From IMG/VR virus record IMGVR_UViG_3300044957_000763, positions 414,841 to 478,840 of that record: 64,000 nucleotides of DNA. One strand, written 5' to 3'. The notes under the pieces are model-generated. The model saw nothing but the letters and a program-made list of their open reading frames with translations, was not told the origin of the DNA and made no database searches. This document shows positions 14,442 to 53,035 of this stretch, piece by piece (the first letter of the stretch is position 1; the number at the start of each line of letters is the position of its first letter). The position numbers and the translations under genes are program-made.

Positions 14442-14449
14442 AACGCATC

Positions 14450-14890: not shown

Positions 14891-14896
14891 TAATGT

Positions 14897-15388: not shown

Positions 15389-15454
15389 TCAAGAAGGCAC
15401 AAGTCACTCAAGATATCTGGTATGATACACAGACTGGTATCTTGAGATTTTAAT

Positions 15455-21582: not shown

Positions 21583-22290
21583 ATGGCCGAAAATAAAGAT
21601 AAACAGGTCGTTAGTTCAATAGTGGTTCCCGGAATGCGAAAGGCATTTCGTGACTTGCCAGTAGAACAGCGTAAATATATTCAGGATTTGAAAGGGGACG
21701 AGCAGCCTTTTTATCCTTTGCCACCTGACCCATATGATGGTGTCACTTATGTTACTTTTCATGAGCCAAAATGTTCTATTTGCTCGTCCCCTTACAAAAC
21801 CCAACTTGAACATGTGTTTCTAGCCAATGGAGAAAGTCCTAGTGCGGTTTCTCAGTATTTCTGGTATTACTATGGCGTAATGGTCAACCCCGCTGCAATT
21901 AAGCAGCACATGAACAAACACTGCGTACTCAATGAAATAACAACATCGGGTTTGGCACAACTTCAGAAACGTGCCGAGGAGTTTGACTGGTGGCGATTGC
22001 GCAGAAGCGAACTGGTAATCACAGGGTTATTGTCGCAAATTGACCGTATTGAAGGTATACGCACAAAGGGCAACCCAGACCTTGAACTAAAGAAATCATC
22101 AGAAATGCGCGCGTTGCTTGCATCATACTCTACAGCACAAAAACAATTTGAAGAAGAAGCCAATGAGGTCATTAGCGTTCGTCATGTCTTGGCAGACATT
22201 ATGAACCTATTGACTGATGAATCTAGTAAAGAAATCATTCGCAAATACGTCAATGACCTCAGAACCAAAATTCGAGGGGATATGTCGTAA
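21583..22290 (+). CDS. Putative terminase small subunit
   Basis: CSIC...HTH-like...HMNKH N-terminal region plus a helical C-terminus; its stop overlaps the terL start. Confidence 0.55.
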   Translation: MAENKDKQVVSSIVVPGMRKAFRDLPVEQRKYIQDLKGDEQPFYPLPPDPYDGVTYVTFHEPKCSICSSPYKTQLEHVFLANGESPSAVSQYFWYYYGVMVNPAAIKQHMNKHCVLNEITTSGLAQLQKRAEEFDWWRLRRSELVITGLLSQIDRIEGIRTKGNPDLELKKSSEMRALLASYSTAQKQFEEEANEVISVRHVLADIMNLLTDESSKEIIRKYVNDLRTKIRGDMS

Positions 22291-29727: not shown

Positions 29728-32700
29728 GTGAATATTAAGAATCTGCTTGGTAAGTTAAGCATTGGTCGTGCTGGGGTATCCACCAGCACAGGTAACATTG
29801 TGCGCACAGGTGCGCCAGAAGATGCATTTCGTTCTGGTGCTTATGAGTTTATTCGCAAAGCACAAACTGAATCCGTTGAACCCACAAAATCCAATATTGC
29901 CAAAAAGCGCATGACACATCCGGTTGTACTTGTGTCTCGATTCAAATACCCATATGTCAAAACCAAGAAAGTACCAGGCGCTGAAGAGGGCGACAAAGAT
30001 ACCAGAGTTGAAACTGGAGAAATTGGCTGGAAGACGACCGTAAACAAAGATGTTGCAGATGAAGCAGTTAATCAATTGTATGCATATGAATTGTATCTGT
30101 ATCATGACACACAAACTGGTCAAGACCTAATTATTGGACAACCAATTGAAGAATATCTTGCAAAATCACAAGCCAAGAGTCAGCAACCAGCGTTTGACTT
30201 AAATGCACCAAGTACTCCAATGGAAGAGCCTGAGTGGCGCACAGAACAAAAAGCAAAGGCAAAGGCAAAGGCAAAGCGTGCAAATAAAGCAGATATTGAT
30301 GCACTAATGCGAAGATTCTCTGCTGGAGAAGCTGCAGAAATGGATATTCCAACTGGAGATTTTTCACAAGATAGAGAAAATGAGCCAGAAAGATACCAAT
30401 TCAAAGGCAAGATTACAAGGTTTACTACACAGCCCAATGACCCAGAGGGTCAAGCTGCTAAACTGGGTGCCAAAGTCGTGCCAGCTTCTGAATTTGGTTA
30501 TCGCGCATATGAAGTAATGCCAAGTCCGGTCGCGGGCGATTTATACACAGAGCCAAACGGCGAAGATGAATCAAAAATACCAACTTGGACAAAGGGTATT
30601 CATATACCAACTGAAGAGTCTCCGTCCGCATATGGGACAAGTTTCAGATATCGGTTCTCTAATGGCGAACCGGTCCCAACACTTAACGGTGCGAAACACG
30701 TGTTGTCTGAGTTATTAAGTGTTAATGGAGAGAAGGCCGCGAAAGACCCAGGTATGAATGCAGATTTCAATATTTATGAATTCATGACTGCAAACAATCT
30801 TTGGGACCAAATGGATAATTCCGGCCGCTTGCCAGAAGGCACAAAAGCCCAAATTGATAATACCGAAGCACAAATTGAATCAATACCAGAGCTAGAACAC
30901 TTCACGCTTGGCGGCGGCTCGCTGGTAAATCTTGGTGGCAAGAAAGATTCTATTATGTCAGAAGAGAATCTTTTGGCAAGAGCACTGTGGCGATTGACGA
31001 ATCCATCTGTTTTCACTTACATCAACAATGATGGAACCGCTGCATTTAGCCCCAAGAACCCAGATGACAAAAACATTAGTCCATTGGTTGCGCTCGACAA
31101 GCAACTCCATGCTGCGCGTCAGGCGTATGTTGAACTGTTTGATTCACTTAGTCCGGCAGAAAGAAAGGTAAGTCCAGAGCTTATTGAGGCGGCAGACAAG
31201 GCCAACAAACTTGGTATCAAGTTTGTTGACACAATGGCAGCCAAATACCCGTCTAAGTTGCGCGAATTTGTACTTAAACAACCATTTGTGGGTCACGCGC
31301 CCGCTGGTCGATATGGCAAACCTGGTGAAAAAGTAGAGAGCGAATATGCGCTCAGCACTACATCACACTTATCAGACAATGGTCGAACTATTGCTACATA
31401 TGAATCAGGTGGCGGACTTCAAAAACTGAATGACGATGACAGAAAGCTGTATGCTCTTGTCAAGGCATTTGAGCGCAATGCAGACACTGCATTAAACAAT
31501 CAGGCAAGAACGCTCCATAGTCAACATCATGCCAAGTTGGAAGATTTTACATCTAAAGACGATAAATCATACAAAATTCCCACACCAAGGTCGGCTGACG
31601 GAGAGTGGTCTGAACCAGCCGGTAAGTCTATTGACTTTATTGAGCAACACTGGCTTGCAAATCACTTGTTAAGTACGGAAGACAAAAATGCAATTTCAGA
31701 ACTTCGGAAAAGCCTAGCTGCTACAGGTAAGAAATATACCTGGGGACAGGCAGCAATGGCGTATCTCAAAAATCAAGACAGATTAAAAGTAAAGAAATAC
31801 ACACAAGGTGCTGGTATGTTGGGTTCAACAGACCACTTCTTGTCGCAAGGACCTTTTACGTTTGAGATTCCTTCGTCCAATGAAGACGAAGGCGAAAATG
31901 AGCTCATAACACTAAACAGGTTTACACCACAGTCTGAAACCGCAGAAAAACTCAAGCATGAAGTGCTCAAACAGCATTTGTTTAATAAACAAGAAGTAGA
32001 ACTTGCAGAGTATTTGGCCGGTAGAGTGCCGTTTGAAAATGAAGACGATGCGCTATTTTCAATTTGGGCCAACTGGTTAATAAAGGCCAAACGCACTGAG
32101 TCAGCCAATAGGGCTGAAAAAGCTCTTGCCGCTCAAGAAGCCAAAGAAAAGTCTAAATCAGAAAATGCCAGGGGTAAACCAAGTGGCTGGCCTTATGCTT
32201 TGACATCTCAAAAATTTAGCGATGAAGAGCGCGAACAATTTGCTGGCAATCTAGAAGATTTTGTCAATACGATTAAAAACCAAGCCGGTGCGGTAATAGA
32301 CCACCATCGAAAAATGGTCTATATCAACCCAGATGGTTCTCAAGTTGAGTTGCCAAGTGCCTTGCCAGTGCAACTACCGGAAGGCGCAAGAGTTCCAATG
32401 CCAGTAAGTATGCTGAAGAGAATCAAGGACGATGATGTATTGGCACAATATGGTTTTGTGAGAATTAAAAACGCTCTATACAGTGCTGTAAACAGCCAGC
32501 CTGTAACAATGCAAGATGGCGTATTGGCTATTGGCGATGAATTGGTTCCTGTTGAATCACTGAACAATATGACGCCTAGCGACATTGTCAAAAACTACAA
32601 TATTTTCATGCGAGATGGTAAGTACTATCACGTATCTGAAAAAAATAGGGTGAGCAGTCCTGTTGTAGAGGTTATTGCACGCGGTGGTGAAAAAATTTCA

Positions 32701-35700
32701 TTGCCATCTGAGAACCTGGGTGAAAGCGGGTTGCAATTGCTTGTTAAATACGTCGAACAAACAACTCGTCAAAAGCTCGCCGGAGGACAAGTGCACGCAT
32801 TCGAATCTGATGATGACAAAATCAAGATGAATGATGTATATACTGCGATGCTTGAGAATGGAGCGTCCCCAAAAAATGCGTATCTGGAATCTAAAAAGGC
32901 TGTAATGCACGAAAAACTCAATAGTGTTGCGGTGCAGTGCTTGTCTAACGGCAAGGATGCAAGTCCACAACATATGAAAGCTGCGGAGGTTTGGATACCA
33001 AAAATAATTGAGACACTTCTCAAGGATGGTAACAAACAGTCAGTCGAAATTATCGCAGATAACTACGATGGATTGGATAATTTGATGAATGCTGCTCGGG
33101 CTGGCCGCCTAGATGTTGATGATGCTCAATATCTAGTAAATACCTACAATAATTTAACCGGAACAACCCCGCAACAAGGCGCATACATCAAACCAATAAT
33201 GCAAGCTGTTTTACTGCATGGATATCAAAAAGAATCTGTTCCTGGTTTGCCGAACAACAAATTCTGGCACATGCTAATGTCCAACGCAGGTAAGAGATTT
33301 GTAGACCGCGCGATTGATACTGAATCTGGAAATGACTTAAGTGCCCAGGCAATGTTACACTTAATGGAAAAACCGGAGTCTCCACTTGAGGGTTATGATT
33401 TGGGCAGAATTTTGCCCAAATCCACAGTATCATTGCTTGAAAAAACACTTAAGGCCGATGAGCGAAGAATGCAACGCGCAAATGGTCGATACAAGACAGG
33501 GAAAAGAACCGTTGTCGAAGAATGGCAGGCTATGCCTTTGCCAAAACTGTTGGCTAATCATATGGATTGGATTACTAATCCACAGATTTTTGGTCAAGAA
33601 ATGATTGACAATGCACACGAACTTGCTGATACAGAACTGGTTAATCAAGAACGCAAAAGACTATTCCCAGCATCATTAGAACATTTGTCTCCTGCTGATG
33701 CCAAACGATTGGAGAATATACAAAGAAATGCCACTGCAATGTATATTCTATTACAACGCCAGGCTTCTAAGCTAGAAAAGTATCCTCAACAAGACGTATG
33801 GGATATTATCATGAGCGAACCCGGCCTTGATACAAGTTCACCTGAGTGGCATGCAAAACACAAGCTAGCTCAACATGAAGCTCGTATAGAAAAAACTTCT
33901 GACTCTTTGCAAGAACAAGCCAAATTAAGAGAGCAACTATCAATCAGAAGCATGTTCGATGTTCCTGAAAATGAGCCAGTTATTAAACTTAGTAACAAAG
34001 ATGCCGAGTCTATTATTGACCAACCCATGGTTAATGCCCTGGCGTCTTCGTTAATGCATGCGCAAGATAGAGACAGGGTTAGTATTTGGGGCAGAGTTAA
34101 TCGTGCCTTTGTAGAAGAGGCAAAAAGCCAAAAGAGCAATCATGCCAAAGGGGTTGTTTATCCTAAGCATTCCGTAGCACTCACAGACACTTCGCCAATC
34201 ATGATAACAGACGACGATGGCAAAGAGCGAGATGTAACTGGATATACGCCTGAAGAGTACGAAAACATTAATAACACAGATACCAAATCGCTTTACAGTG
34301 ATGACAAGGTGTTGCCTGCTGAAATATTGGCTCGAATTAACAAAAACACACGTAGCATATTGTCTGGCAGTAGTGATGGCAATTCAAAAACTCTATTGGG
34401 CGAATTCAGACAGAAGCTAAACGAAGACCTTATGGGAGAAAACCAGGGTCAGATTACTCGTGCACAACGAGCAGAAGCCATGTACACAAAAATCTACACT
34501 ATGGTGTCCAGGCTGAGACGAAGTGTGTTAGAAGACAAAGAAACTCTGGCACACATGGATGCACGTGGTGCCAAGAAGGCATTGCTCAATAAATTGAAAT
34601 CAAATATTGAGAACGACACCAATATCTTGGCAATGGTCGAATCATATAACGTGTTTGAACACCTGGCCAAGATGATTCATTTTGGTAAGGAATTTGGCAA
34701 GAACATTGACAGGCTTACAAAATTAGACTTAGAAGAAAAATCCATTGTAGACAGACTAAAAGACATATACCCAAGTGCGCAACAATCTCCGATGGCTTCT
34801 GCAAAAATGTATGAGCCGGAAATTGCAGATAGACTTATAGAGATAGGCAAAATAAGAACTGGACTTTGCTATATGGCACAAAATAATGCAATGTCTTATG
34901 ATGAAAGTGCTAAAGAATTGTGGAACTTTGTTACTAGAACCACATACATGGACAAACGCAATATTGTGAAAGGAGAAGCCAATGATTTTGGCGTTAATAT
35001 CAGTAACGAAATCGCCAAAAATGAATCCAGGCTTTCTCAAGATGACCGAGACGAGGTTGCTAACATGGTGTTTGACAAACTTGATAAACATGCAAGATGG
35101 TTCGAAGCACCTAGTAACGAAGTGCCGGCATACGAAAGCAGTGCTATAAGGGTTAGAAACCTGAAAAACATTGAGCCACTTACCAGCGAAGACAAAGAAA
35201 TAACCAGTGATATTGATGCTGATGAATTAGCAAGATTCTTGGGTAGGCGCGGTGTGTTGTTTGCTTTAGAAATGGGCAAATTGGACGCAATTTCTGGCAG
35301 ACAAAAGACAGCCAATGTTGATTTTGGGGACGATAGCAAAGCCAGGGTTAAATACACCCAGGACTTCACGCAACCAAAAGACATGTCTTGGTTTATTCAC
35401 AACTGGCTGGAGAATGCATCGGTTTCAGATGAAGCCACTGTGCCGGGAAGAAACGGGTTAAGTGCACTTGACACTGCAATGTGCGAACTCGAAAGGAAGT
35501 TCGCCAAGCCAGGTGGTATTTATTGGACTACTAATGGAGCAGAAAACCCGCTTATTCAATACGCAAATCCGCATGCAATGGGTTACAGTTTGTTCGCAAA
35601 GTATGTTGATATGACGTCTCGTGTAACCCCTGCACCTTTAGAACAATTAATGACAGATGCGTGTAATAAGATTTCACAAGATGTTGACAGCATTCGAGCA

Positions 35701-37236
35701 AGCATTAATTACGACCAGTTGCCAGATAATTCAAAACAAAAGGTTGATGAAGCAATTTTGATTGCATCTAACGCTTACAAAAACCAAGGAATGAAATCTG
35801 CATTAATAGCAGACTACACTAAAAAGAACAATCCAACAAAGTTTGTAGGAACAGACCCACAAGTCTTTACAGATGCTAAAAATGCAGTATCTATACAAAT
35901 GGCTAATCATTATGTGATTGATGACTTAGTGCGACGGGCCTCTGAAAATCAATTGTTTGTTAACAATGGCTCCGAATGGAGGTTCTCAGAAAAGGAAACG
36001 ATAGCTTATATTGCGCACACCGTTGCATCAGAAGTTGTTTCATCAATCAAACATCTTGAGACTCCTGGCCATTGGGAATTAGCGCCGCTATCACCAGTTC
36101 AACTGTACACAGGTATTAAGCCTGGTGAAGTACTTAATACAGATGAAATTCAAGGATATATGTCGCATAGACTACTTGAATTCAAAAAAATGTTGACAGA
36201 GCAATGGAAAGTGGAAACGGTTAGTGACTTAAGCGGAACAAGTTCACATATGATAAAAATTGACCGCATTATCAATACGGCTCAAGATATACTTGATGGC
36301 TTATTGCACTCGAGCATGGGCGGAGATGGTAATGATATTGAATTACCAATGGCACAAGCCATGCAGTCGCTACATGCCAAGTCACAAACCGTTAACACTG
36401 CGTTTCAAGAAGACCTTGATGAAAAAATCAATGACCCAAGAACAAACCTAACGCAGTTCCATGATACACATGTGTTGCCGGCATTGCTTAATTCCGGGCA
36501 AGGAAATATTGAACTTGCGGCGGCAAGGGCTATGCGTCAATTGTCATCTGGTGAATCGACATGGCCAATTGTGTCAATTGGAGTCAAGTCTAAGGTCAGA
36601 CAGCGCAAGGCTGACGAGACACAAGAAGATTATGATGCGTTTCTCAATGCAGAGGCTAAGAAGGCTAAGAAAAGCGTTTCATCCTTGACTTCATACGGTC
36701 CAAAGGACATCAAGCGTATAAATTCTGATGCACTTCGAGACAATGTTATGTCTCAGAGAGTTCATGCCGTGCTTTCAAAGCAAATCTTTGATAGACTAGG
36801 GAGCTTGAAAAATGGTGGCGATTACAATTCTGCCGTTAAGAACAGTGACAGGGCGCACTTCGATAAATTGAAATCCAAAGGATATTATGGTCATTTGGAC
36901 GAGGCACCCACTGGCACTGCTGACTTCGTTCATGGAAATATTGGTGTGCTAAACCTTGATGTTTTGCATCCATTATATGAGCGACTGACTGTCGGACATC
37001 AAGTGGGAATTAGAGGTCTTACACAAGAGCAAAAAAATCAAAGAAAGCCGATAACCGAAAATGCGCCAGAGCCTTTGGCACAACCTGAAACTGTTGTAGA
37101 CGCGCAGACCCCCAGCACGCAGGCGGCAGTTATTGATAAACTAGTGCGCTATGCGACCAGGTTAGACGCAAGAGGCAGATTTGCAGAGGCCGATTTGGTT
37201 GATTCATTAATCCATAAGCTAGAGGTGGGTGTGTGA
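29728..37236 (+). CDS. Giant 2502-aa helical protein, putative internal head/ejection protein
   Basis: 7.5 kb uninterrupted ORF in the head cluster; charged and helix-rich; N-terminal IRKAQ, C-terminal RYATRLDARGRFAEADLVDSL. Confidence 0.6.
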   Translation: MNIKNLLGKLSIGRAGVSTSTGNIVRTGAPEDAFRSGAYEFIRKAQTESVEPTKSNIAKKRMTHPVVLVSRFKYPYVKTKKVPGAEEGDKDTRVETGEIGWKTTVNKDVADEAVNQLYAYELYLYHDTQTGQDLIIGQPIEEYLAKSQAKSQQPAFDLNAPSTPMEEPEWRTEQKAKAKAKAKRANKADIDALMRRFSAGEAAEMDIPTGDFSQDRENEPERYQFKGKITRFTTQPNDPEGQAAKLGAKVVPASEFGYRAYEVMPSPVAGDLYTEPNGEDESKIPTWTKGIHIPTEESPSAYGTSFRYRFSNGEPVPTLNGAKHVLSELLSVNGEKAAKDPGMNADFNIYEFMTANNLWDQMDNSGRLPEGTKAQIDNTEAQIESIPELEHFTLGGGSLVNLGGKKDSIMSEENLLARALWRLTNPSVFTYINNDGTAAFSPKNPDDKNISPLVALDKQLHAARQAYVELFDSLSPAERKVSPELIEAADKANKLGIKFVDTMAAKYPSKLREFVLKQPFVGHAPAGRYGKPGEKVESEYALSTTSHLSDNGRTIATYESGGGLQKLNDDDRKLYALVKAFERNADTALNNQARTLHSQHHAKLEDFTSKDDKSYKIPTPRSADGEWSEPAGKSIDFIEQHWLANHLLSTEDKNAISELRKSLAATGKKYTWGQAAMAYLKNQDRLKVKKYTQGAGMLGSTDHFLSQGPFTFEIPSSNEDEGENELITLNRFTPQSETAEKLKHEVLKQHLFNKQEVELAEYLAGRVPFENEDDALFSIWANWLIKAKRTESANRAEKALAAQEAKEKSKSENARGKPSGWPYALTSQKFSDEEREQFAGNLEDFVNTIKNQAGAVIDHHRKMVYINPDGSQVELPSALPVQLPEGARVPMPVSMLKRIKDDDVLAQYGFVRIKNALYSAVNSQPVTMQDGVLAIGDELVPVESLNNMTPSDIVKNYNIFMRDGKYYHVSEKNRVSSPVVEVIARGGEKISLPSENLGESGLQLLVKYVEQTTRQKLAGGQVHAFESDDDKIKMNDVYTAMLENGASPKNAYLESKKAVMHEKLNSVAVQCLSNGKDASPQHMKAAEVWIPKIIETLLKDGNKQSVEIIADNYDGLDNLMNAARAGRLDVDDAQYLVNTYNNLTGTTPQQGAYIKPIMQAVLLHGYQKESVPGLPNNKFWHMLMSNAGKRFVDRAIDTESGNDLSAQAMLHLMEKPESPLEGYDLGRILPKSTVSLLEKTLKADERRMQRANGRYKTGKRTVVEEWQAMPLPKLLANHMDWITNPQIFGQEMIDNAHELADTELVNQERKRLFPASLEHLSPADAKRLENIQRNATAMYILLQRQASKLEKYPQQDVWDIIMSEPGLDTSSPEWHAKHKLAQHEARIEKTSDSLQEQAKLREQLSIRSMFDVPENEPVIKLSNKDAESIIDQPMVNALASSLMHAQDRDRVSIWGRVNRAFVEEAKSQKSNHAKGVVYPKHSVALTDTSPIMITDDDGKERDVTGYTPEEYENINNTDTKSLYSDDKVLPAEILARINKNTRSILSGSSDGNSKTLLGEFRQKLNEDLMGENQGQITRAQRAEAMYTKIYTMVSRLRRSVLEDKETLAHMDARGAKKALLNKLKSNIENDTNILAMVESYNVFEHLAKMIHFGKEFGKNIDRLTKLDLEEKSIVDRLKDIYPSAQQSPMASAKMYEPEIADRLIEIGKIRTGLCYMAQNNAMSYDESAKELWNFVTRTTYMDKRNIVKGEANDFGVNISNEIAKNESRLSQDDRDEVANMVFDKLDKHARWFEAPSNEVPAYESSAIRVRNLKNIEPLTSEDKEITSDIDADELARFLGRRGVLFALEMGKLDAISGRQKTANVDFGDDSKARVKYTQDFTQPKDMSWFIHNWLENASVSDEATVPGRNGLSALDTAMCELERKFAKPGGIYWTTNGAENPLIQYANPHAMGYSLFAKYVDMTSRVTPAPLEQLMTDACNKISQDVDSIRASINYDQLPDNSKQKVDEAILIASNAYKNQGMKSALIADYTKKNNPTKFVGTDPQVFTDAKNAVSIQMANHYVIDDLVRRASENQLFVNNGSEWRFSEKETIAYIAHTVASEVVSSIKHLETPGHWELAPLSPVQLYTGIKPGEVLNTDEIQGYMSHRLLEFKKMLTEQWKVETVSDLSGTSSHMIKIDRIINTAQDILDGLLHSSMGGDGNDIELPMAQAMQSLHAKSQTVNTAFQEDLDEKINDPRTNLTQFHDTHVLPALLNSGQGNIELAAARAMRQLSSGESTWPIVSIGVKSKVRQRKADETQEDYDAFLNAEAKKAKKSVSSLTSYGPKDIKRINSDALRDNVMSQRVHAVLSKQIFDRLGSLKNGGDYNSAVKNSDRAHFDKLKSKGYYGHLDEAPTGTADFVHGNIGVLNLDVLHPLYERLTVGHQVGIRGLTQEQKNQRKPITENAPEPLAQPETVVDAQTPSTQAAVIDKLVRYATRLDARGRFAEADLVDSLIHKLEVGV

Positions 37237-42539: not shown

Positions 42540-44939
42540 ATGAGGAAAGACGGACAAAATGCACCGCGCCTACAGAGTGTTATTACTGAAGCTGTAGAAA
42601 GAGTCAGCAACATACAACCGAGAAACACCGTTGGTGCTCGAGAACACCCTACTATTCGCAGTGCTCGCTCATCATCAGATGTAAAGAGAGACATTCGTGC
42701 GAGATATGCATTTGTTAGTGGTAGCCAAAACACCATTACAACAGCGCCTAATTTTTACACTCCGTTCACGACACCAAGTTCTTTTCAGATTCCCACAAAC
42801 AGAATTGAAGAGTATTTGTGGGCGCAATGGTTTTTTGATAATGAACCTGCCGTTGCGGCATCTATTGAGTTTTACACAGACTTTCCGCTTTCTGGTTTCG
42901 AACTAGAATGTGGGAACTCTAAGGTTCTTGAGTTTTATCAGCAAATGGTCAAAGATTTGGATTTTGCCAGATTGCTTCCGTTGATTAGTCAAGAATACCA
43001 TCTTCGCGGCGATGTATTTGTTTATGCCTCTCTTGATTGCGAGCATTGCGGAGGAACAGGCGTCGACCAAGACACTCATGAGCCTTGCGAACACCTAGGT
43101 GCTAAATGGAAAAGCATCACGCTGCTAAACCCCACACAGGTAGAACTTAGTCCATCAATGATGGACATGCAACCAATTTACTATTACATGCCAGACGAAG
43201 GCATGAAAAAGGTTGTTCAAGAAAGAAAGCCAATTGCAACATACAAGTCAATTCCAGATGCAATTAAGGCTTATATCATGAAAAATGAGCCAATTCCGCT
43301 AGACCCAGTGTGTATCCACCACTTTAAGAGAGGTGCGGCGCCTTGGCAACCATTCGGCCGAAGTATGGTACGAAGGCTTTTTCCCACGCTTGTATACAAG
43401 GATAAGTTACGACAAGCACAGTATTTGGTTGCAGAAAGGCATATTTTACCATTCAAGATTGCCAAGTTAGGCAATGACGACCGACCAGCCAGCGAACAAG
43501 ACCTTCAAATGATTGCGGAAGAAATCGCTAATGTCGCAAACGACCCTTTGATGACAATGATTGCACCGCATACATTTGAAATTGATTATGTTGGCGCAAG
43601 TGGAAAAGTACTACAACTCACAAACGAATTCGAACTTATCAACCAAGATATTTTCGATGGATTCATGCTTAACAAAGCATTGCTCAACGGAGAAGGTCCT
43701 TCCTATGCCAATGCACAAGTTGGTCTGCTTAGTATGGGCCAGCGCCTCAATAAATTGCGCGGAGAAATCGCGCACTGGATTGAAGAAAATCTATTCAAAC
43801 CAGTTGCTGAATGGAATGGATTTGAGGTTGATAATAAGCGTGGTGGAACTAAGTTGGTTTACCCAACAGTGAAATGGGATGATTTGCAATTGCGTGATAA
43901 CACCAATCTGCTGCAAATTGCCATGCAAGCGCGACAAGCCGGAGACCTTTCCTCACAGACAATGCTCGGACTCATGGATATCAACTACGACCAAGAAATT
44001 GAAAGACTACGTATGGAAAACAGCTATGCCGTATCTACGTCTCCAATGTTGCCTGCTGGCGAAATGGGCAATGGATATCGTGGACCAATGGGTGGCGGAA
44101 TGCCGCCGATGGGTGGCGGAATGCCACCAATGGGTGGCGGAATGCCACCAATGGGTGGTGGAATGCCGCCAATGGACGGAGGAATGGGCATGCCGCCAGC
44201 ACCTGGCGGCATGCCACCGATGCCAATGGCTTCAAATAATACCCCAGAAGAAAACTATCGAGAAGCCGTGTCGTTTACCAACGCAGTACATGACAGTGTG
44301 CGCACAAGTTTCTACAATCACACACGTCAGGTTTATGCCAGCAAGTACAAATCTGAAGCACATCGGAACTTTGTTGAATCACAGTGTCCAATTGATGGAA
44401 CTGGATTCCGGGGTGTATTGGCCTCAGAAATGAGTCCATTGATTGACCCGCTAGATGATTATGGACAATATCATGGCGGAGATGAGTCTGTTCCTATGAA
44501 CCCGCTTGCAATGCAAGAACGGCAAAGTGATGTGTCAAACGGTTGGGTTCGCGAAGCAAGAAAGCCATCAAAAGATGAGGACATCAGACCAAGTCCATAT
44601 CAGAAGTTTACAAGTTGGGAAAACAAACTGTACGGAATTGTTCTGAGCATTAACCCTCCATTGCCATTCTATGCACAATACGCGGCAGGGCCTGATGACC
44701 AGTACAGGCTCGATGGTGCGTTCCCTGATATTCAACTGGGTGTTGAGGCAGATAGTGAAACCTATCATTCAACTCCAGAATATATTGAAAGAGACCGTTA
44801 CCGGGATTCACAACTAGCGGCCCAAGGATGGACTTTGTTGCGATTTACAGAAAATGAACTTAAAGAAAGACCGGACGAGGTCCAGACGTTGATTATGCGT
44901 ACAATCCAACATCTAATCAAACGCAAACTCGGGAACTAA
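42540..44939 (+). CDS. Portal protein with a Pro/Met/Gly linker and C-terminal DUF559-like nuclease-fold domain
   Basis: WFFDNEPAVAASIEFYTDFP, PFGRSMVRRLF, AERHILP.KIAKLG, WIEENLFKPVAE, VKWDDLQL portal-type pattern directly before the protease; C-terminal YRLDGAF...VEADSETYH...RDSQLAAQGWTLLRFTE. Confidence 0.75.
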   Translation: MRKDGQNAPRLQSVITEAVERVSNIQPRNTVGAREHPTIRSARSSSDVKRDIRARYAFVSGSQNTITTAPNFYTPFTTPSSFQIPTNRIEEYLWAQWFFDNEPAVAASIEFYTDFPLSGFELECGNSKVLEFYQQMVKDLDFARLLPLISQEYHLRGDVFVYASLDCEHCGGTGVDQDTHEPCEHLGAKWKSITLLNPTQVELSPSMMDMQPIYYYMPDEGMKKVVQERKPIATYKSIPDAIKAYIMKNEPIPLDPVCIHHFKRGAAPWQPFGRSMVRRLFPTLVYKDKLRQAQYLVAERHILPFKIAKLGNDDRPASEQDLQMIAEEIANVANDPLMTMIAPHTFEIDYVGASGKVLQLTNEFELINQDIFDGFMLNKALLNGEGPSYANAQVGLLSMGQRLNKLRGEIAHWIEENLFKPVAEWNGFEVDNKRGGTKLVYPTVKWDDLQLRDNTNLLQIAMQARQAGDLSSQTMLGLMDINYDQEIERLRMENSYAVSTSPMLPAGEMGNGYRGPMGGGMPPMGGGMPPMGGGMPPMGGGMPPMDGGMGMPPAPGGMPPMPMASNNTPEENYREAVSFTNAVHDSVRTSFYNHTRQVYASKYKSEAHRNFVESQCPIDGTGFRGVLASEMSPLIDPLDDYGQYHGGDESVPMNPLAMQERQSDVSNGWVREARKPSKDEDIRPSPYQKFTSWENKLYGIVLSINPPLPFYAQYAAGPDDQYRLDGAFPDIQLGVEADSETYHSTPEYIERDRYRDSQLAAQGWTLLRFTENELKERPDEVQTLIMRTIQHLIKRKLGN
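44085..44186 (+). repeat. 21-bp coding tandem repeat (PMGGGMP)n in the portal gene
   Basis: About 4.5 near-identical units of ccaatgggtggcggaatgccN. Confidence 0.9.
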
Positions 44940-44972: not shown

Positions 44973-45069
44973 TTCCAGACGATTTTTTGAAAACAAGTAG
45001 GTCTAAGGGCAAACATTGCCGAACGCACATATAGACGTTAACTTTTCAAAAAGTTGTTTTGGAGCGAGC

Positions 45070-48000
45070 ATGTTACGAAAGGGTATATCAGGAAACCTAA
45101 TTGGGCGCAATCAAATAGAGTTCATTGACCCGGCCGAAGCTCGGCGGGTCATCATTGCTGCCAAAAATGGCAAACAAAGCCTATATGCAGACCCAGCAGA
45201 TGTGCTCAATCGAGACGTTGAAGGCGATTTTGATTTATTGAAAGAAATGAATGACCGCCAGGGATACAATCTCTTGTGGGTCAGATGTCGTGCTATTGAC
45301 GCTGATACGATTAATGCCAATGGTGATTATTTCTCAGCAGAAGAGCTTCTTAAAGAAGTCATTCACCATGGAAAAAAGGTTCCGGCTTATAAAACCTTTG
45401 AAGGTTGTCCAATCCACACTAATCACGATAACAAAGACATCACCAAGGCTAAAGGCGAGGTCGTATATGCAGAGTGGGATGATAAAAACCAGTGCGTGTG
45501 GTGCACGTTCTATATATCAGAAGACGCATACCCAGAAATTGCCAATGGTATTCGCATTGGTATGATGAGCGATGTCTCAATGGGATGTACTGTTGAGAGC
45601 GGCTTGTGTTCTGTTTGTGGAAAAGAGGCCGTTCGTGTTGATGACTACTGCGAACACCTTAAAAAATACAAAGGCAAGAAATTGCCTGGTGCGAACAGTA
45701 AGGTGTATGAAAAAAACAAGGGTATCAAGTTCATTGAACTGTCTCTGGTTAATGATGGTGCATTTGACAGTTGTGCAATTAGCGAACTCTATGACCAAGA
45801 CGAACTAACTCAAAAAGCACTTGAATTCAACCGAAGAGTTGCTGAGATTCGAAATCATGTTTTGACAGCGGGTCACCTTACTGCTGAAATGACGCCTTCT
45901 GTGCGCAATGCATATGAGGGCATGCTAAGAACTGTTGTGAGCACAACCACAACTGCTGTTAGAGTGGCGCAGACCCAAGTAGACAATCCACAGTTACTTG
46001 CAACTAATGGTGCAAATGCCAATTCTACCGTTGCTGGAATTTTGAAGGCACTTGGAATGGACGCAAGACAACAACTTAACGTGCTTGACTTGCTAAATGT
46101 TGCGCTTAACTTCCTTGAAGTCGCAATTATGCAGATGTTCACTCGCAAAGATAATGTTGATTTACAACACGTATCAAAGATTGCCAAAGCTATGTCTGAC
46201 CTTCAAGGAACCATGCAAGACTTAATTGACGATGGTGTTGATTCACCAGTAGGTGCCATTGCCGGTACTGGTGGTGCTGCAGGAACATTGCTAAATCCAG
46301 GCGGCGGACAAACAGGACAAACCTCTGTAGCACAGGCACCAGGCCAAGCACAAGCACCCGTACAACCATATAATCCGGCAGAAGGCGGAGTCGGACAAAT
46401 GATGTCACCTGTTCAAGTAAGTGAAAGGTCATTTACTACTGAAAAACCACTCAACCCATTATTAGGCGAAAGCAATAGACGCCAATTGGTATGGGCAAAC
46501 AAAGATAGTTCAGAGGAGCGAGAAGTATACGCATCGCGCAAATCTAGAGCCAATAACATAGAACGATTTGGTCAAAGCCTATTAGCTTTGGCTGAAAGCG
46601 TTGGGGCTGGCCCACTGGCGGCACCAATGTCTACACGTGCCGCTAATAACGAGCAACCAGTGAGAAGTACTAAAACAGTGCAAAATAACGGAGACACAAC
46701 CAAGATGAAAAACCCATTCCAGAGAATCGCAAGTAAATTGCGTGAAAGGAAGCCACTCGAGGTCTCATTCTCAGCAGAGGCTCACAGTCCTGATACAAAC
46801 CACAGAATTGTAGTTTCAACGAAAGGAGACATCGAAGGCTACTATATGAACCGGCTTGCCAATTGGCAACCGCAACTCAACGACCACCTTATTAGTGCAA
46901 TCGAGCAAGAGAACCTTGATTATGCGCTTCCTGTTTTAATGGAAGACTTTCAAAATCATGTTCGAAACGCACAGACTAAAAACATTGACATTTGGTCAGA
47001 TATTGACCTTGAACCAGAGGGTGAAAAGGATGTCAAGGAAAATGCACTTGAGGGTGAACGACACCCGGTAAAGGGCGATGGTGAAATCATTGACAGCTAT
47101 GTCAAGACAAAGCGAACAAACCCTGCTGGTGACACAACCATAGAGGACGAACTTGAAGCCAAAAGAACAGGCACGGATTCTAAGGCTAAAGAAGAGTTGC
47201 TCGAAAATGCTGGTCTGTATGCACGTCGAGATAATGGTCAGGAAGTACATGACTTCCTGGTTGACGATGCACGTTGTGGATGCCCTGACGAACATATTGA
47301 AGAGAGGCTCAAGGGTCGACACGGTCGCAATGACAAGGTGGAAACACGCAAACTTGCAAGCAATATCGCCACCGAACTCGGCCGCGCTGCTTATGCTGCT
47401 CGTGTGACACCAGAAGAGATTATCGAAGTCTCTACAAAAATTGCACAACGAGAAGACCTTGAGGAACTTATCGCTCTGGCATCTCTGGGTACAGATACCA
47501 GAGAGCGAACTGCACAAAGACACGCTTTCTTTAACAACTCATCTGTAATGTTGGGTGCTGAAAATGCTATCTATCACGGTCTTGGCAAAATCGTCAGCGA
47601 TGACATTAAAGCCGGTGACGTTGTAGACGGTCTTCGTGCTGTAATTAGCGAGCGAGAACTTGCTGGAAAATTGATTACTCGAATTGCAAAAACAATGGTT
47701 GAGAATGCACCAACAACTTATGCTGATGTTGTGGTTAAAGCATCTCGCGAAGAACAACTGCGAACTGCTTTGAATTCTCTTGCAGATGGCGAGACTGAAA
47801 CCAGTCGGGGTCATCTCAAGGCTGTGCTTTGCGCTCTAGCAGGAGCTGCAGATGAGTGCCAAGCCGCGCCTGAAGAGGTTATCAATGTAATTGCATCACG
47901 CAATTCTGGTGAAATCTTCGAAACACTCGGCATGTACAACAGCGCAAGTGCACGAGAGGCCAGAAATACTCTTAGACAAAGAGAAGAGTTCTATGGCAAG

Positions 48001-49302
48001 CGAATGGCATCTAAGAAAGATGTCGAGCACACCGTGTTCGGCTGGATGTCAGATTTTGTCCACGATGGTCAAATCGACAGCTACGCGCTTGCCGAAGCGG
48101 CAAGCCTTCTCGGAGCTCGACCTGTTGCTGCGACTAATTTACTTGGTCGACTGCTCGAACGCCAGGCGGCAATTTCGGTTACAGATGAAAAGTGCACAAC
48201 CAAGAGACTGACAGCAACTGTTAGTGACTTTGAAGACCTAGACCCCAAGTCAAATGACTTCGACCAACAGTTTAGAATGCGTGCAATGGACATCTTCCGA
48301 CAAGCTGGTTACGATGTTGACGATGGCACATTCAACCTAACTAGTTTGAGTGTTGACCAGTCTGGAAACATTCAAGCTGAAGTCTCCGCACGACTCACCA
48401 AGACATTCTGTGTCGAAGGAAGTAAAGTTGGCGCGGGCATGGATGCGGTAAACGAACTTCCAGTTGAAGCCACACTTGCAGAAAACACACCAATGGAAGA
48501 TGAATCTGGAAATCTCTACACTGTTTCGGCCATGGATGTGCTTGGAATGGAGCGAACTGCTCAAGCCGCACCAGGAATGGGTGGCGGAATGGGAATGGGA
48601 ATGCCGCCGGCTGCACCAGCGGGTGGTGGTGTTGACCCGTTGGCCGGGGCTACCGACCCAATGGGCGGAGGCTTTGCTTCAATGACAGTACCTAGTGAAT
48701 CAGGGGCGCCAGGAACTGAACCAGTTACCGACACTGTAAACGCAGACGATATGTCAGAACCGGGCACAAAACAACCATGGGGGACAGTGTGTCCTGTCTG
48801 TGGTTCAAAGGACGTTAGCATTGCTAACGGCGAAGGTGAGTGCCAGAGCTGTGGTACACAATTGAAATTCAAGCTGATGGTCGAGGCCGCTCCGAGCACC
48901 GATGATGCTGGCGGCGGAGACGAGGGTGCCGATGCTGGAGTGGATGACATGGGTGCAATGCCTGGTGGTGACATGGGCGCTGCACCAGCCATGCCTGCGG
49001 CTGGGGCACCAACAGACCCAATGATGATGCAAGCAAGTTGGACAAGTTCGCCGCTGGTATGGCAACGATTTGCTGCGGCTGGTCAAGGCGTTTCTGAAAA
49101 AGAAGCAACCAAAGCCAGACAAGCAATGAAACAATTACCAGTCGGACATGTTTGCCCTGGCTGTGGCGACCGTGAACAAATCGAGAAGATTCGAAATAAG
49201 ACTATTTGTACTGCTTGCGGTACGGTGGCTGTTTCCAAGGTTGCGGCAGTAGAAGGACAGCCTAATCTGTTGTCCAATACCATCTACTGGATACTCGAAT
49301 AA
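45070..49302 (+). CDS. Prohead (capsid maturation) protease with a ~1150-aa C-terminal extension
   Basis: N-terminal NANGDYF..EEL, HTNHD (His), VSMGC (Ser), FIELSLV HK97/assemblin-type pattern; C-terminal CPVCG..CQSCG and CPGCG..CTACG zinc ribbons; ATG 45070 with GGAG at 45061. Confidence 0.75.
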   Translation: MLRKGISGNLIGRNQIEFIDPAEARRVIIAAKNGKQSLYADPADVLNRDVEGDFDLLKEMNDRQGYNLLWVRCRAIDADTINANGDYFSAEELLKEVIHHGKKVPAYKTFEGCPIHTNHDNKDITKAKGEVVYAEWDDKNQCVWCTFYISEDAYPEIANGIRIGMMSDVSMGCTVESGLCSVCGKEAVRVDDYCEHLKKYKGKKLPGANSKVYEKNKGIKFIELSLVNDGAFDSCAISELYDQDELTQKALEFNRRVAEIRNHVLTAGHLTAEMTPSVRNAYEGMLRTVVSTTTTAVRVAQTQVDNPQLLATNGANANSTVAGILKALGMDARQQLNVLDLLNVALNFLEVAIMQMFTRKDNVDLQHVSKIAKAMSDLQGTMQDLIDDGVDSPVGAIAGTGGAAGTLLNPGGGQTGQTSVAQAPGQAQAPVQPYNPAEGGVGQMMSPVQVSERSFTTEKPLNPLLGESNRRQLVWANKDSSEEREVYASRKSRANNIERFGQSLLALAESVGAGPLAAPMSTRAANNEQPVRSTKTVQNNGDTTKMKNPFQRIASKLRERKPLEVSFSAEAHSPDTNHRIVVSTKGDIEGYYMNRLANWQPQLNDHLISAIEQENLDYALPVLMEDFQNHVRNAQTKNIDIWSDIDLEPEGEKDVKENALEGERHPVKGDGEIIDSYVKTKRTNPAGDTTIEDELEAKRTGTDSKAKEELLENAGLYARRDNGQEVHDFLVDDARCGCPDEHIEERLKGRHGRNDKVETRKLASNIATELGRAAYAARVTPEEIIEVSTKIAQREDLEELIALASLGTDTRERTAQRHAFFNNSSVMLGAENAIYHGLGKIVSDDIKAGDVVDGLRAVISERELAGKLITRIAKTMVENAPTTYADVVVKASREEQLRTALNSLADGETETSRGHLKAVLCALAGAADECQAAPEEVINVIASRNSGEIFETLGMYNSASAREARNTLRQREEFYGKRMASKKDVEHTVFGWMSDFVHDGQIDSYALAEAASLLGARPVAATNLLGRLLERQAAISVTDEKCTTKRLTATVSDFEDLDPKSNDFDQQFRMRAMDIFRQAGYDVDDGTFNLTSLSVDQSGNIQAEVSARLTKTFCVEGSKVGAGMDAVNELPVEATLAENTPMEDESGNLYTVSAMDVLGMERTAQAAPGMGGGMGMGMPPAAPAGGGVDPLAGATDPMGGGFASMTVPSESGAPGTEPVTDTVNADDMSEPGTKQPWGTVCPVCGSKDVSIANGEGECQSCGTQLKFKLMVEAAPSTDDAGGGDEGADAGVDDMGAMPGGDMGAAPAMPAAGAPTDPMMMQASWTSSPLVWQRFAAAGQGVSEKEATKARQAMKQLPVGHVCPGCGDREQIEKIRNKTICTACGTVAVSKVAAVEGQPNLLSNTIYWILE

Positions 49303-52174: not shown

Positions 52175-53035
52175 ATGAGCAACATCCGAAACGTATATGG
52201 CATTGACGAGCAAAACGAAGAGTTTCTCGCAGCCGCTATGGACACCCCCGAAGGTCGCGTCGCACTTGCGCAGGCAATGGTTGAGCCCATCAAAACATCT
52301 TTGATGTACCAGGGCGTTGGCCGAAAACTGCTGATGGTTGACGAACTACCGCAGGGTGCCCTTCCTCGCTACGAGCGAGACATCGCAGTTAAGTCTTACG
52401 TAATGAGTAAGCGTGGCTCAGTTCCAACGTCTATCGTTGAAGCTGAAGAGTTGATGGTGCCGGTTCTTGAAATCGCTTGTAACCCAACCGTTAAACTCAA
52501 CGAAATCCGTGCACGACGATTCTACATTGTAGACCGAGCACAGGTTCGTGCGAAGGACTCATTGCAACGACAAGAGGATGCAGAAGTCTTCCGTGTTATT
52601 AACGCGGCTGTACCTGCGGCACACAACATCACGGTTACTGGTTCACTCCAGCCCGAGAACATCAACCTCGCTCTGTCTCTCATTGAGGAACACGAGTTGA
52701 TTGGTGCGAAGATTGTTGTGCACCCTCAGCGCTACAAGGACATCCGAACATGGGGTAAGGAATTCTATGATGAAGCGACAACTCGCGACATCTTGATGAC
52801 CGGTCTCTTCGGCCACCTGTACTCTGCAGACATCCACGTCAGCACAATCGTTCCAAAGAACGCTGTCTACGTACTGGCACCTGCCGCCTTCGTTGGCGCG
52901 ATGCCTGTTCGCCAGGACATCACCGTTCTTCCGAGCGACGACCCTCGACGACTCCGCCTCGGCTGGGTCATCTTCGAGGAACTTGGCTTCGCCGTTATCA
53001 ACGACTACGCCACCGCTCGAATCATCGTTAGCTAA
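52175..53035 (+). CDS. Major capsid protein (HK97 fold, 286 aa)
   Basis: GRVALAQAMVEPI...GVGRKLLMVDELPQG...EIACNP.V...QEDAEVF...IVVHP..YKDI...GLFGHLYSADI; strong RBS; follows protease-scaffold-decoration genes; strong terminator after it. Confidence 0.85.
   Translation: MSNIRNVYGIDEQNEEFLAAAMDTPEGRVALAQAMVEPIKTSLMYQGVGRKLLMVDELPQGALPRYERDIAVKSYVMSKRGSVPTSIVEAEELMVPVLEIACNPTVKLNEIRARRFYIVDRAQVRAKDSLQRQEDAEVFRVINAAVPAAHNITVTGSLQPENINLALSLIEEHELIGAKIVVHPQRYKDIRTWGKEFYDEATTRDILMTGLFGHLYSADIHVSTIVPKNAVYVLAPAAFVGAMPVRQDITVLPSDDPRRLRLGWVIFEELGFAVINDYATARIIVS

What the first reader, a model, noticed from the sequence alone, without database searches (positions are those of the whole stretch)
42540..44939. 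Portal fused in frame to a DUF559/Vsr-like nuclease-fold domain
Seen: after the portal body come a (PMGGGMP)n tract, a ~120-aa spacer, the WVREAR motif (~44544) and a ~115-aa domain with RLD, VEAD, YH and RD..L...GW.LLRF residues of DUF559-type PD-(D/E)XK proteins. There is no stop or intein boundary. Established: portal C-termini face the capsid interior and contact DNA. Inference: 12 copies of a DNA-binding or nuclease domain are packaged and possibly released by the prohead protease, for DNA gripping, headful sensing, or delivery into the host.
Basis: partly seen in the sequence, partly recalled or inferred. Interest (0 to 1): 0.7.

Follow-up and report, generated by a model that had tools for sequence, protein, structure and literature searches.

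The report
Phage portal carrying a built-in nuclease
In a whole clade of giant lake-water phages, the portal protein (the ring through which DNA enters and leaves the capsid) is permanently fused, by a floppy tether, to a small DNA-cutting enzyme domain with an intact active site, so twelve copies of a nuclease should sit inside every capsid; what they cut is not known.

Summary
Window 42540..44939 (+) is one uninterrupted 799-aa ORF. It has a portal body (res ~76-500), a disordered Gly/Met/Pro tether (501-565, with 4.9 copies of a 21-bp repeat), a fast-evolving helical spacer (566-688) and a Vsr/DUF559-fold nuclease domain (689-794).

Contigs from four sequencing runs span the gene with no differences. 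The genome is a 478,840-bp virus record with direct terminal repeats.

The fusion is ancient and fixed. About 110 clusters at 50% identity carry it, on viral contigs up to 488 kb. I found no nuclease-less member inside the clade. Sister portals at 30-35% identity, and Bacillus phage G, lack it.

The nuclease evolves as slowly as the portal core and co-diverges with it. It keeps the catalytic residues of Vsr and I-Bth0305I in 166-169 of 170 distinct sequences. In six relatives an intein sits inside its E-x-D motif.

The most likely function is a virion-carried DNase inside the capsid at the portal vertex, probably a cargo enzyme for the infected cell. Release by the prohead protease remains untested.

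Rejected ideas: assembly artefact, mobile homing endonuclease, substitute for the terminase nuclease, and clade-wide pairing with C5 methylases.

I found no published description. It is a new variant of known kinds.

The parts
42540..44939 (+). Whole portal-nuclease fusion gene (799 aa plus stop codon)
   Evidence: Single ORF. Identical in contigs from four runs. More than 200 homologues have the same architecture.
42540..42764 (+). N-terminal region, res 1-75: poorly conserved and mostly disordered
   Evidence: pLDDT 37-67. Low column conservation. dN 0.243 against L006.
42765..44039 (+). Portal body, res 76-500 (wing, stem, clip, crown)
   Evidence: phrog_16240 E=2e-37 and PF06074. Foldseek matches solved portals, for example lambda, T4, G20c and HTV1. 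pLDDT mostly 80-95.
42909..43094 (+). Invariant Cys/His positions in the portal body (C124, C167, C170, C183, H185), possibly a metal-binding knuckle
   Evidence: Invariant columns in 44 sequences. Metal binding is an inference.
44040..44234 (+). Disordered Gly/Met/Pro-rich tether, res 501-565
   Evidence: pLDDT 31-39. Length varies and gaps reach 39%. Nuclease-less sister portals have similar G/P/M-rich tails.
44084..44186 (+). 21-bp tandem repeat x4.9 encoding (PMGGGMP)4
   Evidence: TRF score 157, 89% matches. Copy number differs among relatives at 92-96% identity: 4 here, 3 in P0001, 2 in P0004.
44235..44603 (+). Spacer, res 566-688: helices 569-599, 606-614 and 655-667, with conserved motifs (Y573, PVTGRG-like 617-625, G646, N654, A657, basic R-x-A-A-K-K patch 671-678)
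   Evidence: AF2 model. Conservation. Evolves fast: mean pairwise identity 0.32, dN 0.372.
44604..44921 (+). Vsr/DUF559-fold nuclease domain, res 689-794; predicted catalytic set E694, D725, E736, D738, H743, D752 (plus R755, D756, R768)
   Evidence: PF04480 and PF18741. pLDDT 90-98. VIA-align Z=12.4 to 3hrl, 12.1 to 3r3p, 10.3 to 1cw0. Residue mapping. Retained in 166-169 of 170 distinct sequences.
45016..49302 (+). Next gene, 1428 aa: N-terminal head-maturation-protease-like domain (res ~60-257), a long middle part, a G/M/P-rich tract and two C-terminal zinc ribbons. It is the candidate protease or scaffold of the same head module.
   Evidence: phrog_18299 E=3.5e-20. Weak zinc-ribbon Pfam hits. 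Syntenic in L003 and L006.
52175..53035 (+). Major head protein of the same module
   Evidence: phrog_2522 E=7.8e-69.
22290..25409 (+). Large terminase (1039 aa) interrupted by a LAGLIDADG intein (about res 243-650). The C-extein still matches terminase profiles through the nuclease region.
   Evidence: PHROG TerL hits. PF14528/Hom_end. phrog_2 E=6.5e-17 to profile positions 346-596 of 807. Atlas neighbours are TerL_nuclease/Terminase_6C clusters.

Best explanation
This is a genuine portal protein that carries a catalytically competent Vsr/DUF559-type (EDxHD) endonuclease as a permanent C-terminal appendage. The nuclease hangs on a disordered Gly/Met/Pro tether of about 65 residues plus a helical spacer of about 120 residues. 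Shown here: the single reading frame, the portal fold, the nuclease fold, the intact active-site residues, the clade-wide fixation and the strong purifying selection. From established portal topology (the chain continues after the crown helices): the appendage points into the capsid, so each virion should hold twelve nuclease domains at the portal vertex, next to the DNA end that leaves first. Inferred: fusion to the portal serves as a way of packaging the enzyme, and the enzyme works as a virion-carried DNase. My preferred version (about 0.4 on its own) is a cargo enzyme that is freed from the tether during head maturation or ejection, enters the cell with or ahead of the genome, and cuts host or competitor DNA. 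The second version (about 0.25) is that it stays tethered and processes or holds the phage's own DNA at the portal. The likely origin is capture of a free-standing EDxHD/DUF559 endonuclease gene lying just downstream of the portal gene, joined onto a flexible C-terminal tail that the portal already had. The confidence given (0.55) is for the general statement of a capsid-internal, active, virion-carried DNase, not for either sub-version.
For: One ORF with no artefact. Portal fold. Nuclease fold: Z=12.4, 12.1 and 10.3 to NGO0050, I-Bth0305I and Vsr-DNA. E736/D738/H743/D752 align to the I-Bth0305I residues E-x-N208...H213...D222, which correspond to Vsr H64/H69/D97. D725 aligns to the Asp of NGO0050's 'IVDF' strand, the position I take to be the essential metal-binding Asp (I-Bth0305I D196 / Vsr D51) named in PMC3239194. 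These residues are kept in 166-169 of 170 distinct domain sequences. Nuclease mean pairwise identity is 0.585 against 0.604 for the portal core, with Mantel r=0.74 and 0 of 2000 permutations reaching it. dN is 0.118 (nuclease) against 0.090 (core) and 0.372 (spacer), with dS saturated. About 110 representatives at 50% identity carry the domain, and complete relatives at 35% core identity or less lack it. No nuclease-less member was found within the clade in IMG/VR. The module is never found free-standing: both apparent cases are artefacts. Canonical inteins (C...HN|C) sit between the E and the D of the E-x-D motif in six representatives, which is typical of sites under strong functional constraint. 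Sister portals already end in G/P/M-rich tails. Free-standing phage DUF559 proteins of 200-300 aa with the nuclease at the C-terminus are common. Precedents for head-packaged enzymatic cargo attached to portal-associated proteins: MuF-toxin fusions (PMC3482391). The related nuclease module acts as the effector end of the Hhe defence protein.
Against: No nuclease activity, DNA binding, virion proteomics or cleavage data exist for any member, and no cultured phage has the fusion. No conserved protease-type cleavage motif was found in the tether or spacer. The protease-tail co-fold gave no answer. An active DNase stored next to 479 kb of phage DNA needs a self-protection mechanism that I could not identify. 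C5 methylation is not it across the clade, since 0 of 10 relatives have such a methylase. No conserved inhibitor gene lies upstream. Twelve copies is a low dose for an injected effector.
Confidence: 0.55

Rival explanations
1. The nuclease stays tethered and acts on the phage's own DNA at the inner face of the portal. It might trim, nick or hold a genome end during or after packaging, or at the end of ejection. This would be functionally comparable to the T4 gp4 head-completion nuclease or the DNA-binding, portal-bound SPP1 gp7.
For: Covalent attachment with no conserved cleavage motif. Portal topology puts it beside the DNA. A virion-associated REase-fold nuclease needed for packaging is known in T4-like phages (PMC7824862). 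The conserved basic patch just before the domain could contact DNA. SPP1 gp7 is cited from my own knowledge.
Against: The terminase appears to keep its own nuclease region, so no cutting step is obviously missing. Sister-clade huge phages, including phage G, package similar-sized genomes without it. An unregulated DNase inside the head would damage the genome.
Confidence: 0.25
2. It is a selfish homing endonuclease (EDxHD family) that happens to be fused to the 3' end of the portal gene. It acts in the cytoplasm to cut portal alleles that lack it and so spreads itself, without serving the virion.
For: The best structural match includes the I-Bth0305I homing endonuclease. The module's layout (helical N-part plus C-terminal nuclease, about 235 aa) resembles free-standing phage DUF559 endonucleases. 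These genomes are rich in mobile elements: an intein in TerL here and up to six inteins in relatives' portals.
Against: Presence is universal, not patchy, within a deep clade. It co-diverges with the portal core. It is constrained as strongly as the core, and its active site is retained in about 98% of sequences, whereas fixed homing endonucleases are expected to decay. No intron or intein surrounds it, and no NUMOD/HTH DNA-binding motif is detected. It is the only DUF559 copy in the genome. This probably describes its origin, not its present role.
Confidence: 0.1
3. The domain is a non-catalytic DNA- or RNA-binding or structural module, as in RAP domains and other inactivated PD-(D/E)XK folds. 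It would serve only to grip DNA or to organise the head interior.
For: The Vsr-like fold also occurs in RNA-binding RAP/FASTKD proteins. There is no biochemical evidence of activity.
Against: All acidic and His residues needed for metal-dependent catalysis are kept in 166-169 of 170 sequences. Binding-only derivatives usually lose them.
Confidence: 0.08
4. The portal nuclease replaces or complements a defective terminase nuclease for headful cutting.
For: No Terminase_6N, Terminase_6C or phage G TerL match was found at first in the genome.
Against: TerL is present (22290..25409). Its C-extein matches TerL profiles through the nuclease region, and its nearest atlas clusters are TerL_nuclease/Terminase_6C. 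The portal C-terminus is on the opposite, inner side from where terminase cuts.
Confidence: 0.03

Closest known systems
DUF559 proteins (PF04480), e.g. Neisseria gonorrhoeae NGO0050, PDB 3HRL
   Same: Same fold over the whole domain: 93 of 94 residues aligned, rmsd 1.8 A, Z=12.4, 29% identity. Pfam score is above the cut-off. Same conserved D...ExD..H...D..R...RF residues.
   Different: Those are small free-standing bacterial proteins of unknown function. Here the domain is the C-terminal end of a virion structural protein.
I-Bth0305I, prototype of the EDxHD homing endonucleases (PDB 3R3P; PMC3239194)
   Same: Catalytic domain superimposes (Z=12.1, 96 of 97 residues). The catalytic E, D, H and D residues are conserved. 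Like it, the domain lacks the Vsr zinc site. It is phage-encoded, with the nuclease at the C-terminus after a helical region.
   Different: I-Bth0305I sits in a group I intron, has NUMOD/HTH DNA-binding motifs and is mobile. The portal module has none of these, is fixed and is vertically inherited.
E. coli Vsr (very short patch repair endonuclease; PDB 1VSR, 1CW0)
   Same: Shared fold (Z=9.2-10.3) and active-site geometry: a metal-binding Asp, a His general base and a second Asp.
   Different: There are no Cys residues in res 689-794, so no Vsr-type zinc site. The N-terminal DNA-intercalating arm could not be recognised. There is no clade-wide link to C5 methylases. The automatic name 'very-short-patch-repair endonuclease' given to these portals is misleading.
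Mu-type / phage G-type portal proteins (PF06074, phrog_16240; Bacillus phage G gp14)
   Same: Homologous portal body: 28% identity to phage G gp14 over res 39-501. Same head-module neighbourhood with a protease or scaffold gene and the major head protein.
   Different: Phage G gp14 (648 aa) and sister-clade portals have no nuclease domain, only short or low-complexity tails.
MuF-domain polymorphic toxins / 'portal and MuF-like fusion' head proteins
   Same: Same logic: an enzymatic domain, sometimes a nuclease, is attached to a portal-associated head protein and so is predicted to be packaged in the capsid (PMC3482391). 'Portal and MuF-like fusion' as an annotation term is from my own knowledge.
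   Different: There is no MuF domain here. The C-terminal domain is not polymorphic, since it is the same domain throughout the clade. No adjacent immunity gene was seen.
T4 gp4 head-completion nuclease (REase/TnsA-like fold)
   Same: A PD-(D/E)XK-superfamily DNase associated with the portal vertex of a large myovirus and required for packaging or head completion (PMC7824862).
   Different: It is a separate protein from a different branch of the superfamily, and it acts from the outer, neck side. This one is covalently part of the portal and faces inward.
Hhe and PDC-S37 defence proteins (PADLOC)
   Same: Their C-terminal nuclease module matches res ~733-794 (E=1e-5 to 4e-7), so this is the same DUF559/MTES_1575 type of effector domain appended to a large carrier protein.
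   Different: The carrier is a bacterial defence protein (in Hhe a helicase, from my own knowledge). Here it is a phage portal.

Membership tests
Phage portal protein (Mu / phage G type, PF06074) | Sequence match to portal profiles above the curated threshold | tested here: met
   PF06074 33.6 bits against a 23.9 cut-off. phrog_16240 E=2e-37, plus five more portal PHROGs.
Phage portal protein (Mu / phage G type, PF06074) | Portal fold (wing, stem, clip, crown) | tested here: met
   AF2 model with pLDDT 80-95 over res 80-500. 143 PDB portal chains at E<0.001.
Phage portal protein (Mu / phage G type, PF06074) | Located in a head-morphogenesis module, and the only portal in the genome | tested here: met
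   Followed by a protease-like gene and the major head protein. Single match in the 478,840-bp genome.
Phage portal protein (Mu / phage G type, PF06074) | Forms a dodecameric ring at one capsid vertex | not testable with these tools
   Needs cryo-EM or biochemistry.
DUF559 / Vsr-like PD-(D/E)XK nucleases (PF04480, clan with PF03852 and PF18741) | Profile match above the curated threshold | tested here: met
   PF04480 29 bits against 20.6. PF18741 38.0 against 38.2, just under its cut-off. 33 bits in the six-frame search.
DUF559 / Vsr-like PD-(D/E)XK nucleases (PF04480, clan with PF03852 and PF18741) | Vsr-type alpha/beta fold | tested here: met
   Z=12.4, 12.1 and 10.3 to 3hrl, 3r3p and 1cw0. 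TM 0.85 by target.
DUF559 / Vsr-like PD-(D/E)XK nucleases (PF04480, clan with PF03852 and PF18741) | Catalytic residues (Vsr E25, D51, H64 position, H69, D97 = I-Bth0305I E170, D196, N208, H213, D222) | tested here: met
   E736, D738, H743 and D752 are placed by profile alignment to 3r3p. D725 is placed by alignment to 3hrl, and its equivalence to Vsr D51 is inferred. E694 is placed by its position in helix 1 (inferred). Retained in 166-169 of 170 sequences.
DUF559 / Vsr-like PD-(D/E)XK nucleases (PF04480, clan with PF03852 and PF18741) | Mg-dependent endonuclease activity | not testable with these tools
   Needs a biochemical assay.
Vsr proper (T:G mismatch nicking enzyme partnered with Dcm) | Structural zinc site (Cys/His) | tested here: not met
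   There is no Cys in res 689-794 (sequence). I-Bth0305I also lacks this site.
Vsr proper (T:G mismatch nicking enzyme partnered with Dcm) | Genomic association with a C5-cytosine methyltransferase | tested here: not met
   This genome has at least 3 PF00145 genes, but 0 of 10 large relatives with the fusion have any.
EDxHD homing endonucleases (I-Bth0305I family) | Encoded within an intron or intein, or as a mobile free-standing ORF with patchy distribution | tested here: not met
   Continuous with the portal ORF with no Hint domain. Universal in the clade and co-diverging with the portal.
EDxHD homing endonucleases (I-Bth0305I family) | N-terminal NUMOD/HTH DNA-binding region | tested here: inconclusive
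   No Pfam hit in res 566-688 at E up to 1. The spacer is helical, but no fold match was obtained for it.
MuF-type capsid-packaged polymorphic toxins | MuF domain carrier, variable C-terminal toxin and adjacent immunity gene | tested here: not met
   No MuF hit. The same C-terminal domain occurs in all members. The upstream small ORF is not conserved.

The most novel reading that the evidence does not exclude
The portal doubles as a delivery vehicle. Twelve active endonucleases are built into every capsid of a whole clade of 250-490 kb phages. They are released from a flexible tether and are the first phage molecules to enter the cell, where they cut host, plasmid or rival-phage DNA. This would be a virion-borne 'first-strike' nuclease and a new principle for loading enzymatic cargo, namely direct fusion to the portal instead of a capsid-targeting peptide or a MuF adaptor.
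Probability: 0.3. Interest if true: 0.8.

Novelty: new variant of a known kind. Interest (0 to 1): 0.62.

Why it matters
Portals are among the most conserved and best-studied parts of tailed phages and herpesviruses, and they are regarded as purely structural and mechanical. Here a portal carries a conserved enzyme with an intact active site, facing the packaged DNA, and it is fixed across a large, environmentally widespread clade of huge phages.

That raises concrete, testable questions:
- How is the genome protected from its own capsid-resident DNase?
- Is the enzyme released, and is it ejected?
- What does it cut?

If it is a delivered effector, it shows a simple way to load exactly twelve copies of an enzyme at the exit vertex, which could also be useful for engineering phage cargo.

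There is also a practical annotation point. Pipelines name these proteins 'very-short-patch-repair endonuclease' or 'DUF559 domain-containing protein', which hides the portal gene of these genomes.

Tried and rejected
1. Assembly or frameshift artefact: rejected (and the conserved homologues).

2. Free-standing versions of the spacer-plus-nuclease module: the only two hits are artefacts. P0121 results from a single frameshift at the start of the Gly-rich tract in L003. P0122 is an internal start call in a truncated or chimeric portal gene in L004.

3. Nuclease-less members inside the clade: 12 IMG/VR loci looked truncated. Eight have the tail in the same frame and four run off the contig end. 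P0066 has an unrelated C-terminus, which I did not pursue.

4. Portal nuclease as a substitute for a missing terminase nuclease. The first searches for TerL failed. TerL was then found with an intein and a C-extein that matches TerL profiles through the nuclease region. phmmer of that C-extein against PDB sequences found nothing.

5. Dcm-Vsr style pairing or 5mC self-protection: the genome has at least 3 C5 methylases, but 0 of 10 large relatives do. No N6/N4 methylase or thymidylate-synthase-type enzyme was found in this genome.

6. Conserved T4-type ([LIVM]xE) or phiKZ/SPN3US-type ([SAG]xE) cleavage motifs in the tether or spacer: none at 50% or more of sequences at an aligned position. This is a weak test, because the alignment there is unreliable and the protease's specificity is unknown. 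The protease domain has no PDB sequence match.

7. Protease-tail co-folding: no answer, so it counts neither way.

8. Upstream 110-aa ORF as a conserved inhibitor: not conserved in L003 or phage G.

9. dN/dS against L006: dS is saturated, so only dN values are usable.

10. Literature: four full-text searches of the held library found no description of a portal-DUF559/Vsr fusion, nor did the jumbo-phage comparative genomics paper.

Full report
WHAT IS THERE

Window 42540..44939 (+) is a single 799-aa ORF. The window is the last 64 kb of a 478,840-bp IMG/VR virus record with direct terminal repeats, judged complete. This is the record's only match to the protein. The gene lies in a head module. 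It is followed by a 1428-aa protein whose N-terminus matches head-maturation proteases (phrog_18299, E=3.5e-20), and then by the major head protein (phrog_2522, E=7.8e-69). The large terminase lies upstream at 22290..25409.

THE FIVE PARTS

- Res 1-75 are poorly conserved and disordered.
- Res 76-500 are a portal. Evidence: phrog_16240 E=2e-37, Pfam Portal_Mu above its cut-off, and an AF2 model that matches 143 solved portal chains at E<0.001. The nearest cultured relative is Bacillus phage G gp14, at 28% identity over res 39-501 only.
- Res 501-565 are a disordered Gly/Met/Pro tract (pLDDT 31-39). It contains a 21-bp repeat x4.9 at 44084..44186, and the copy number varies among relatives at 92-96% identity.
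- Res 566-688 are a partly helical spacer with a few conserved motifs. The conserved feature is a basic R-x-A-A-K-K patch.
- Res 689-794 are a Vsr/DUF559-fold domain. Evidence: PF04480 above its cut-off, pLDDT 90-98, Foldseek TM 0.85 to I-Bth0305I and NGO0050, and VIA-align Z=12.4, 12.1 and 10.3 to 3hrl, 3r3p and Vsr-DNA.

IS IT REAL?

Contigs assembled from four lake-water runs cover the gene and its flanks with no difference, gap or joint. These runs may include the sample the window was assembled from, so they test for artefact rather than give independent confirmation.

The same architecture recurs in more than 120 proteins at 41-96% identity. In an exhaustive search, about 110 representatives at 50% identity carry it. 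It occurs on IMG/VR contigs up to 488 kb.

Twelve IMG/VR loci looked truncated. Eight have the tail in frame and four run off the contig end. Two 'stand-alone' modules are artefacts, one a frameshift and one a wrong start call. Complete portals at 30-35% core identity, and phage G, lack the domain. They often end in a similar G/P/M-rich tail. The tether is therefore older than the nuclease, and the nuclease was gained once at the base of a clade of huge phages.

IS THE NUCLEASE FUNCTIONAL?

The profile alignment to the I-Bth0305I crystal sequence puts E736-x-D738 on E-x-N208, H743 on H213 and D752 on D222. The alignment to NGO0050 puts D725 on the Asp of its 'IVDF' strand. By the published correspondence (PMC3239194), the first set equals the Vsr H64 position, H69 (general base) and D97. 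I take D725 to be the equivalent of the essential metal-binding Asp (Vsr D51 / I-Bth0305I D196). E694 in the first helix is the likely equivalent of E25/E170 (inferred from position).

Across 170 distinct domain sequences these residues are kept in 166-169. The domain's mean pairwise identity (0.585) equals that of the portal core (0.604), and the two co-diverge (Mantel r=0.74, 0 of 2000 permutations). Against the closest nucleotide relative, dN is 0.118 for the nuclease, 0.090 for the core and 0.372 for the spacer, with dS saturated.

Six representatives carry a canonical intein (Cys start, His-Asn end, +1 Cys) exactly between the Glu and the Asp of the E-x-D motif. Inteins characteristically lodge in the most constrained sites of important proteins (established knowledge). 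All of this points to a working enzyme and not to a relic.

HOW IT PROBABLY WORKS

In the portal fold the chain ends in the crown, which faces the capsid interior (established). Here the crown helices (res 455-500) are followed directly by the tether. Twelve nuclease modules should therefore hang inside the head at the portal vertex. This follows from topology and was not observed.

I take fusion to the portal to be the loading mechanism for a virion-carried DNase. My preferred reading (about 0.4) is cargo that is freed and enters the cell with the DNA. The logic resembles MuF-toxin fusions (PMC3482391) and T4 internal proteins (own knowledge). The main rival (about 0.25) is that the domain stays tethered and acts on the phage's own DNA end, comparable to the virion-associated REase-fold nuclease T4 gp4 (PMC7824862).

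Giant-phage portals are known substrates of prohead proteases, but in SPN3US and phiKZ the trimming is N-terminal (PMC10052503). I found no conserved cleavage-type motif, and the co-folding job gave no answer. Release therefore remains open.

IDEAS TESTED AND DROPPED

- Substitute for the terminase nuclease: TerL has a LAGLIDADG intein, but its C-extein still matches terminase profiles through the nuclease region.
- Vsr-Dcm partnership or 5mC self-marking: three C5 methylases occur here but none in ten large relatives.
- Active homing endonuclease: the distribution is universal, the domain co-diverges with the portal, it is constrained, and it is the only DUF559 in the genome. Capture of a neighbouring DUF559 endonuclease gene is a plausible origin, since phages carry many such free-standing genes.
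- Upstream inhibitor gene: not conserved.

COMPARISON AND NOVELTY

Both halves belong to known families, and the membership tests are listed separately. The C-terminal domain is a DUF559/EDxHD-type member of the Vsr-like clan. It is not a Vsr proper: it has no zinc site and no clade-wide methylase link.

The combination is what is unusual: a portal with a conserved, active-site-intact enzyme on an internal tether. Four full-text searches of the held library and the main jumbo-phage comparative study returned no description of it. Public pipelines label these portals 'very-short-patch-repair endonuclease' or 'DUF559 domain-containing protein'.

I rate it a new variant of known kinds, with interest 0.62. 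The architecture is solid, but the function is inferred only.

Noticed in passing
window 22290..25409 (+): The large terminase (1039 aa) is interrupted by a LAGLIDADG-type intein at roughly res 243-650. Without splicing it out, Terminase_6N/6C searches and a phage G TerL search of the genome found nothing.
   Followed up: partly
P0124-P0235 (relatives of the portal): Portal genes of this clade are intein hot spots. Representatives of 1,100-3,000 aa match in 3-7 pieces. Recurrent insertion sites lie at about query res 95-115, 165, 345-355, 385-395 and inside the nuclease E-x-D motif. The copy in this window has none.
   Followed up: partly
window 45016..49302 (+): A 1428-aa protein with an N-terminal prohead-protease-like domain, a long uncharacterised middle, a Gly/Met/Pro-rich tract like the portal tether, and two C-terminal zinc-ribbon motifs. 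It is syntenic next to the portal in L003 and L006.
   Followed up: partly
window 42909..43094 (portal res 124-185): Invariant C124, C167-x2-C170 and C183-x-H185 in all 44 aligned portals. This suggests a metal-binding knuckle inserted in the portal body, which is unusual for portals.
   Followed up: no
G000:C1:173768-175257 and 398750-399985 (outside the window): At least three C5-cytosine DNA methyltransferase genes in this genome, two of them adjacent. None was found in ten large related genomes.
   Followed up: yes
L006 (GCA_018268375.1 contig JAFDWS010000002.1, 1.36 Mb); IMG/VR records behind L046, L075, L076, L077: A close relative of the whole head module (portal core 85% identical) lies on a 1.36-Mb contig of a MAG labelled Armatimonadetes, with an IS605/TnpB gene just after the major head protein. 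Four related IMG/VR records of 255-476 kb are classed 'provirus'. This is a host clue, an integrated giant prophage or a mis-binned contig; I did not resolve which.
   Followed up: no
window 29728..37236 (+): A 2502-aa ORF with no PHROG match, conserved in synteny upstream of the head module (a 2390-aa gene in L006).
   Followed up: no
L003 5890..5960: In one relative, a single frameshift at the start of the Gly-rich tract splits the gene into a 522-aa portal and a 260-aa 'DUF559 protein'. It is probably a sequencing error in the low-complexity repeat, but a real split or recoding event was not excluded.
   Followed up: partly
P0066: One homologue (784 aa, portal core 49% identical) has a C-terminal region that does not align with the nuclease domain. 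It may be a replacement, a frameshift or a chimera.
   Followed up: no
window 795..16558 (+): A replication module sits upstream of the head genes: a DNA polymerase (1108 aa; phage G's group is reported to use a Pol III-type enzyme), a RecJ-like exonuclease, a UvsX-like recombinase, the ribonucleotide reductase large subunit and a clamp loader.
   Followed up: no
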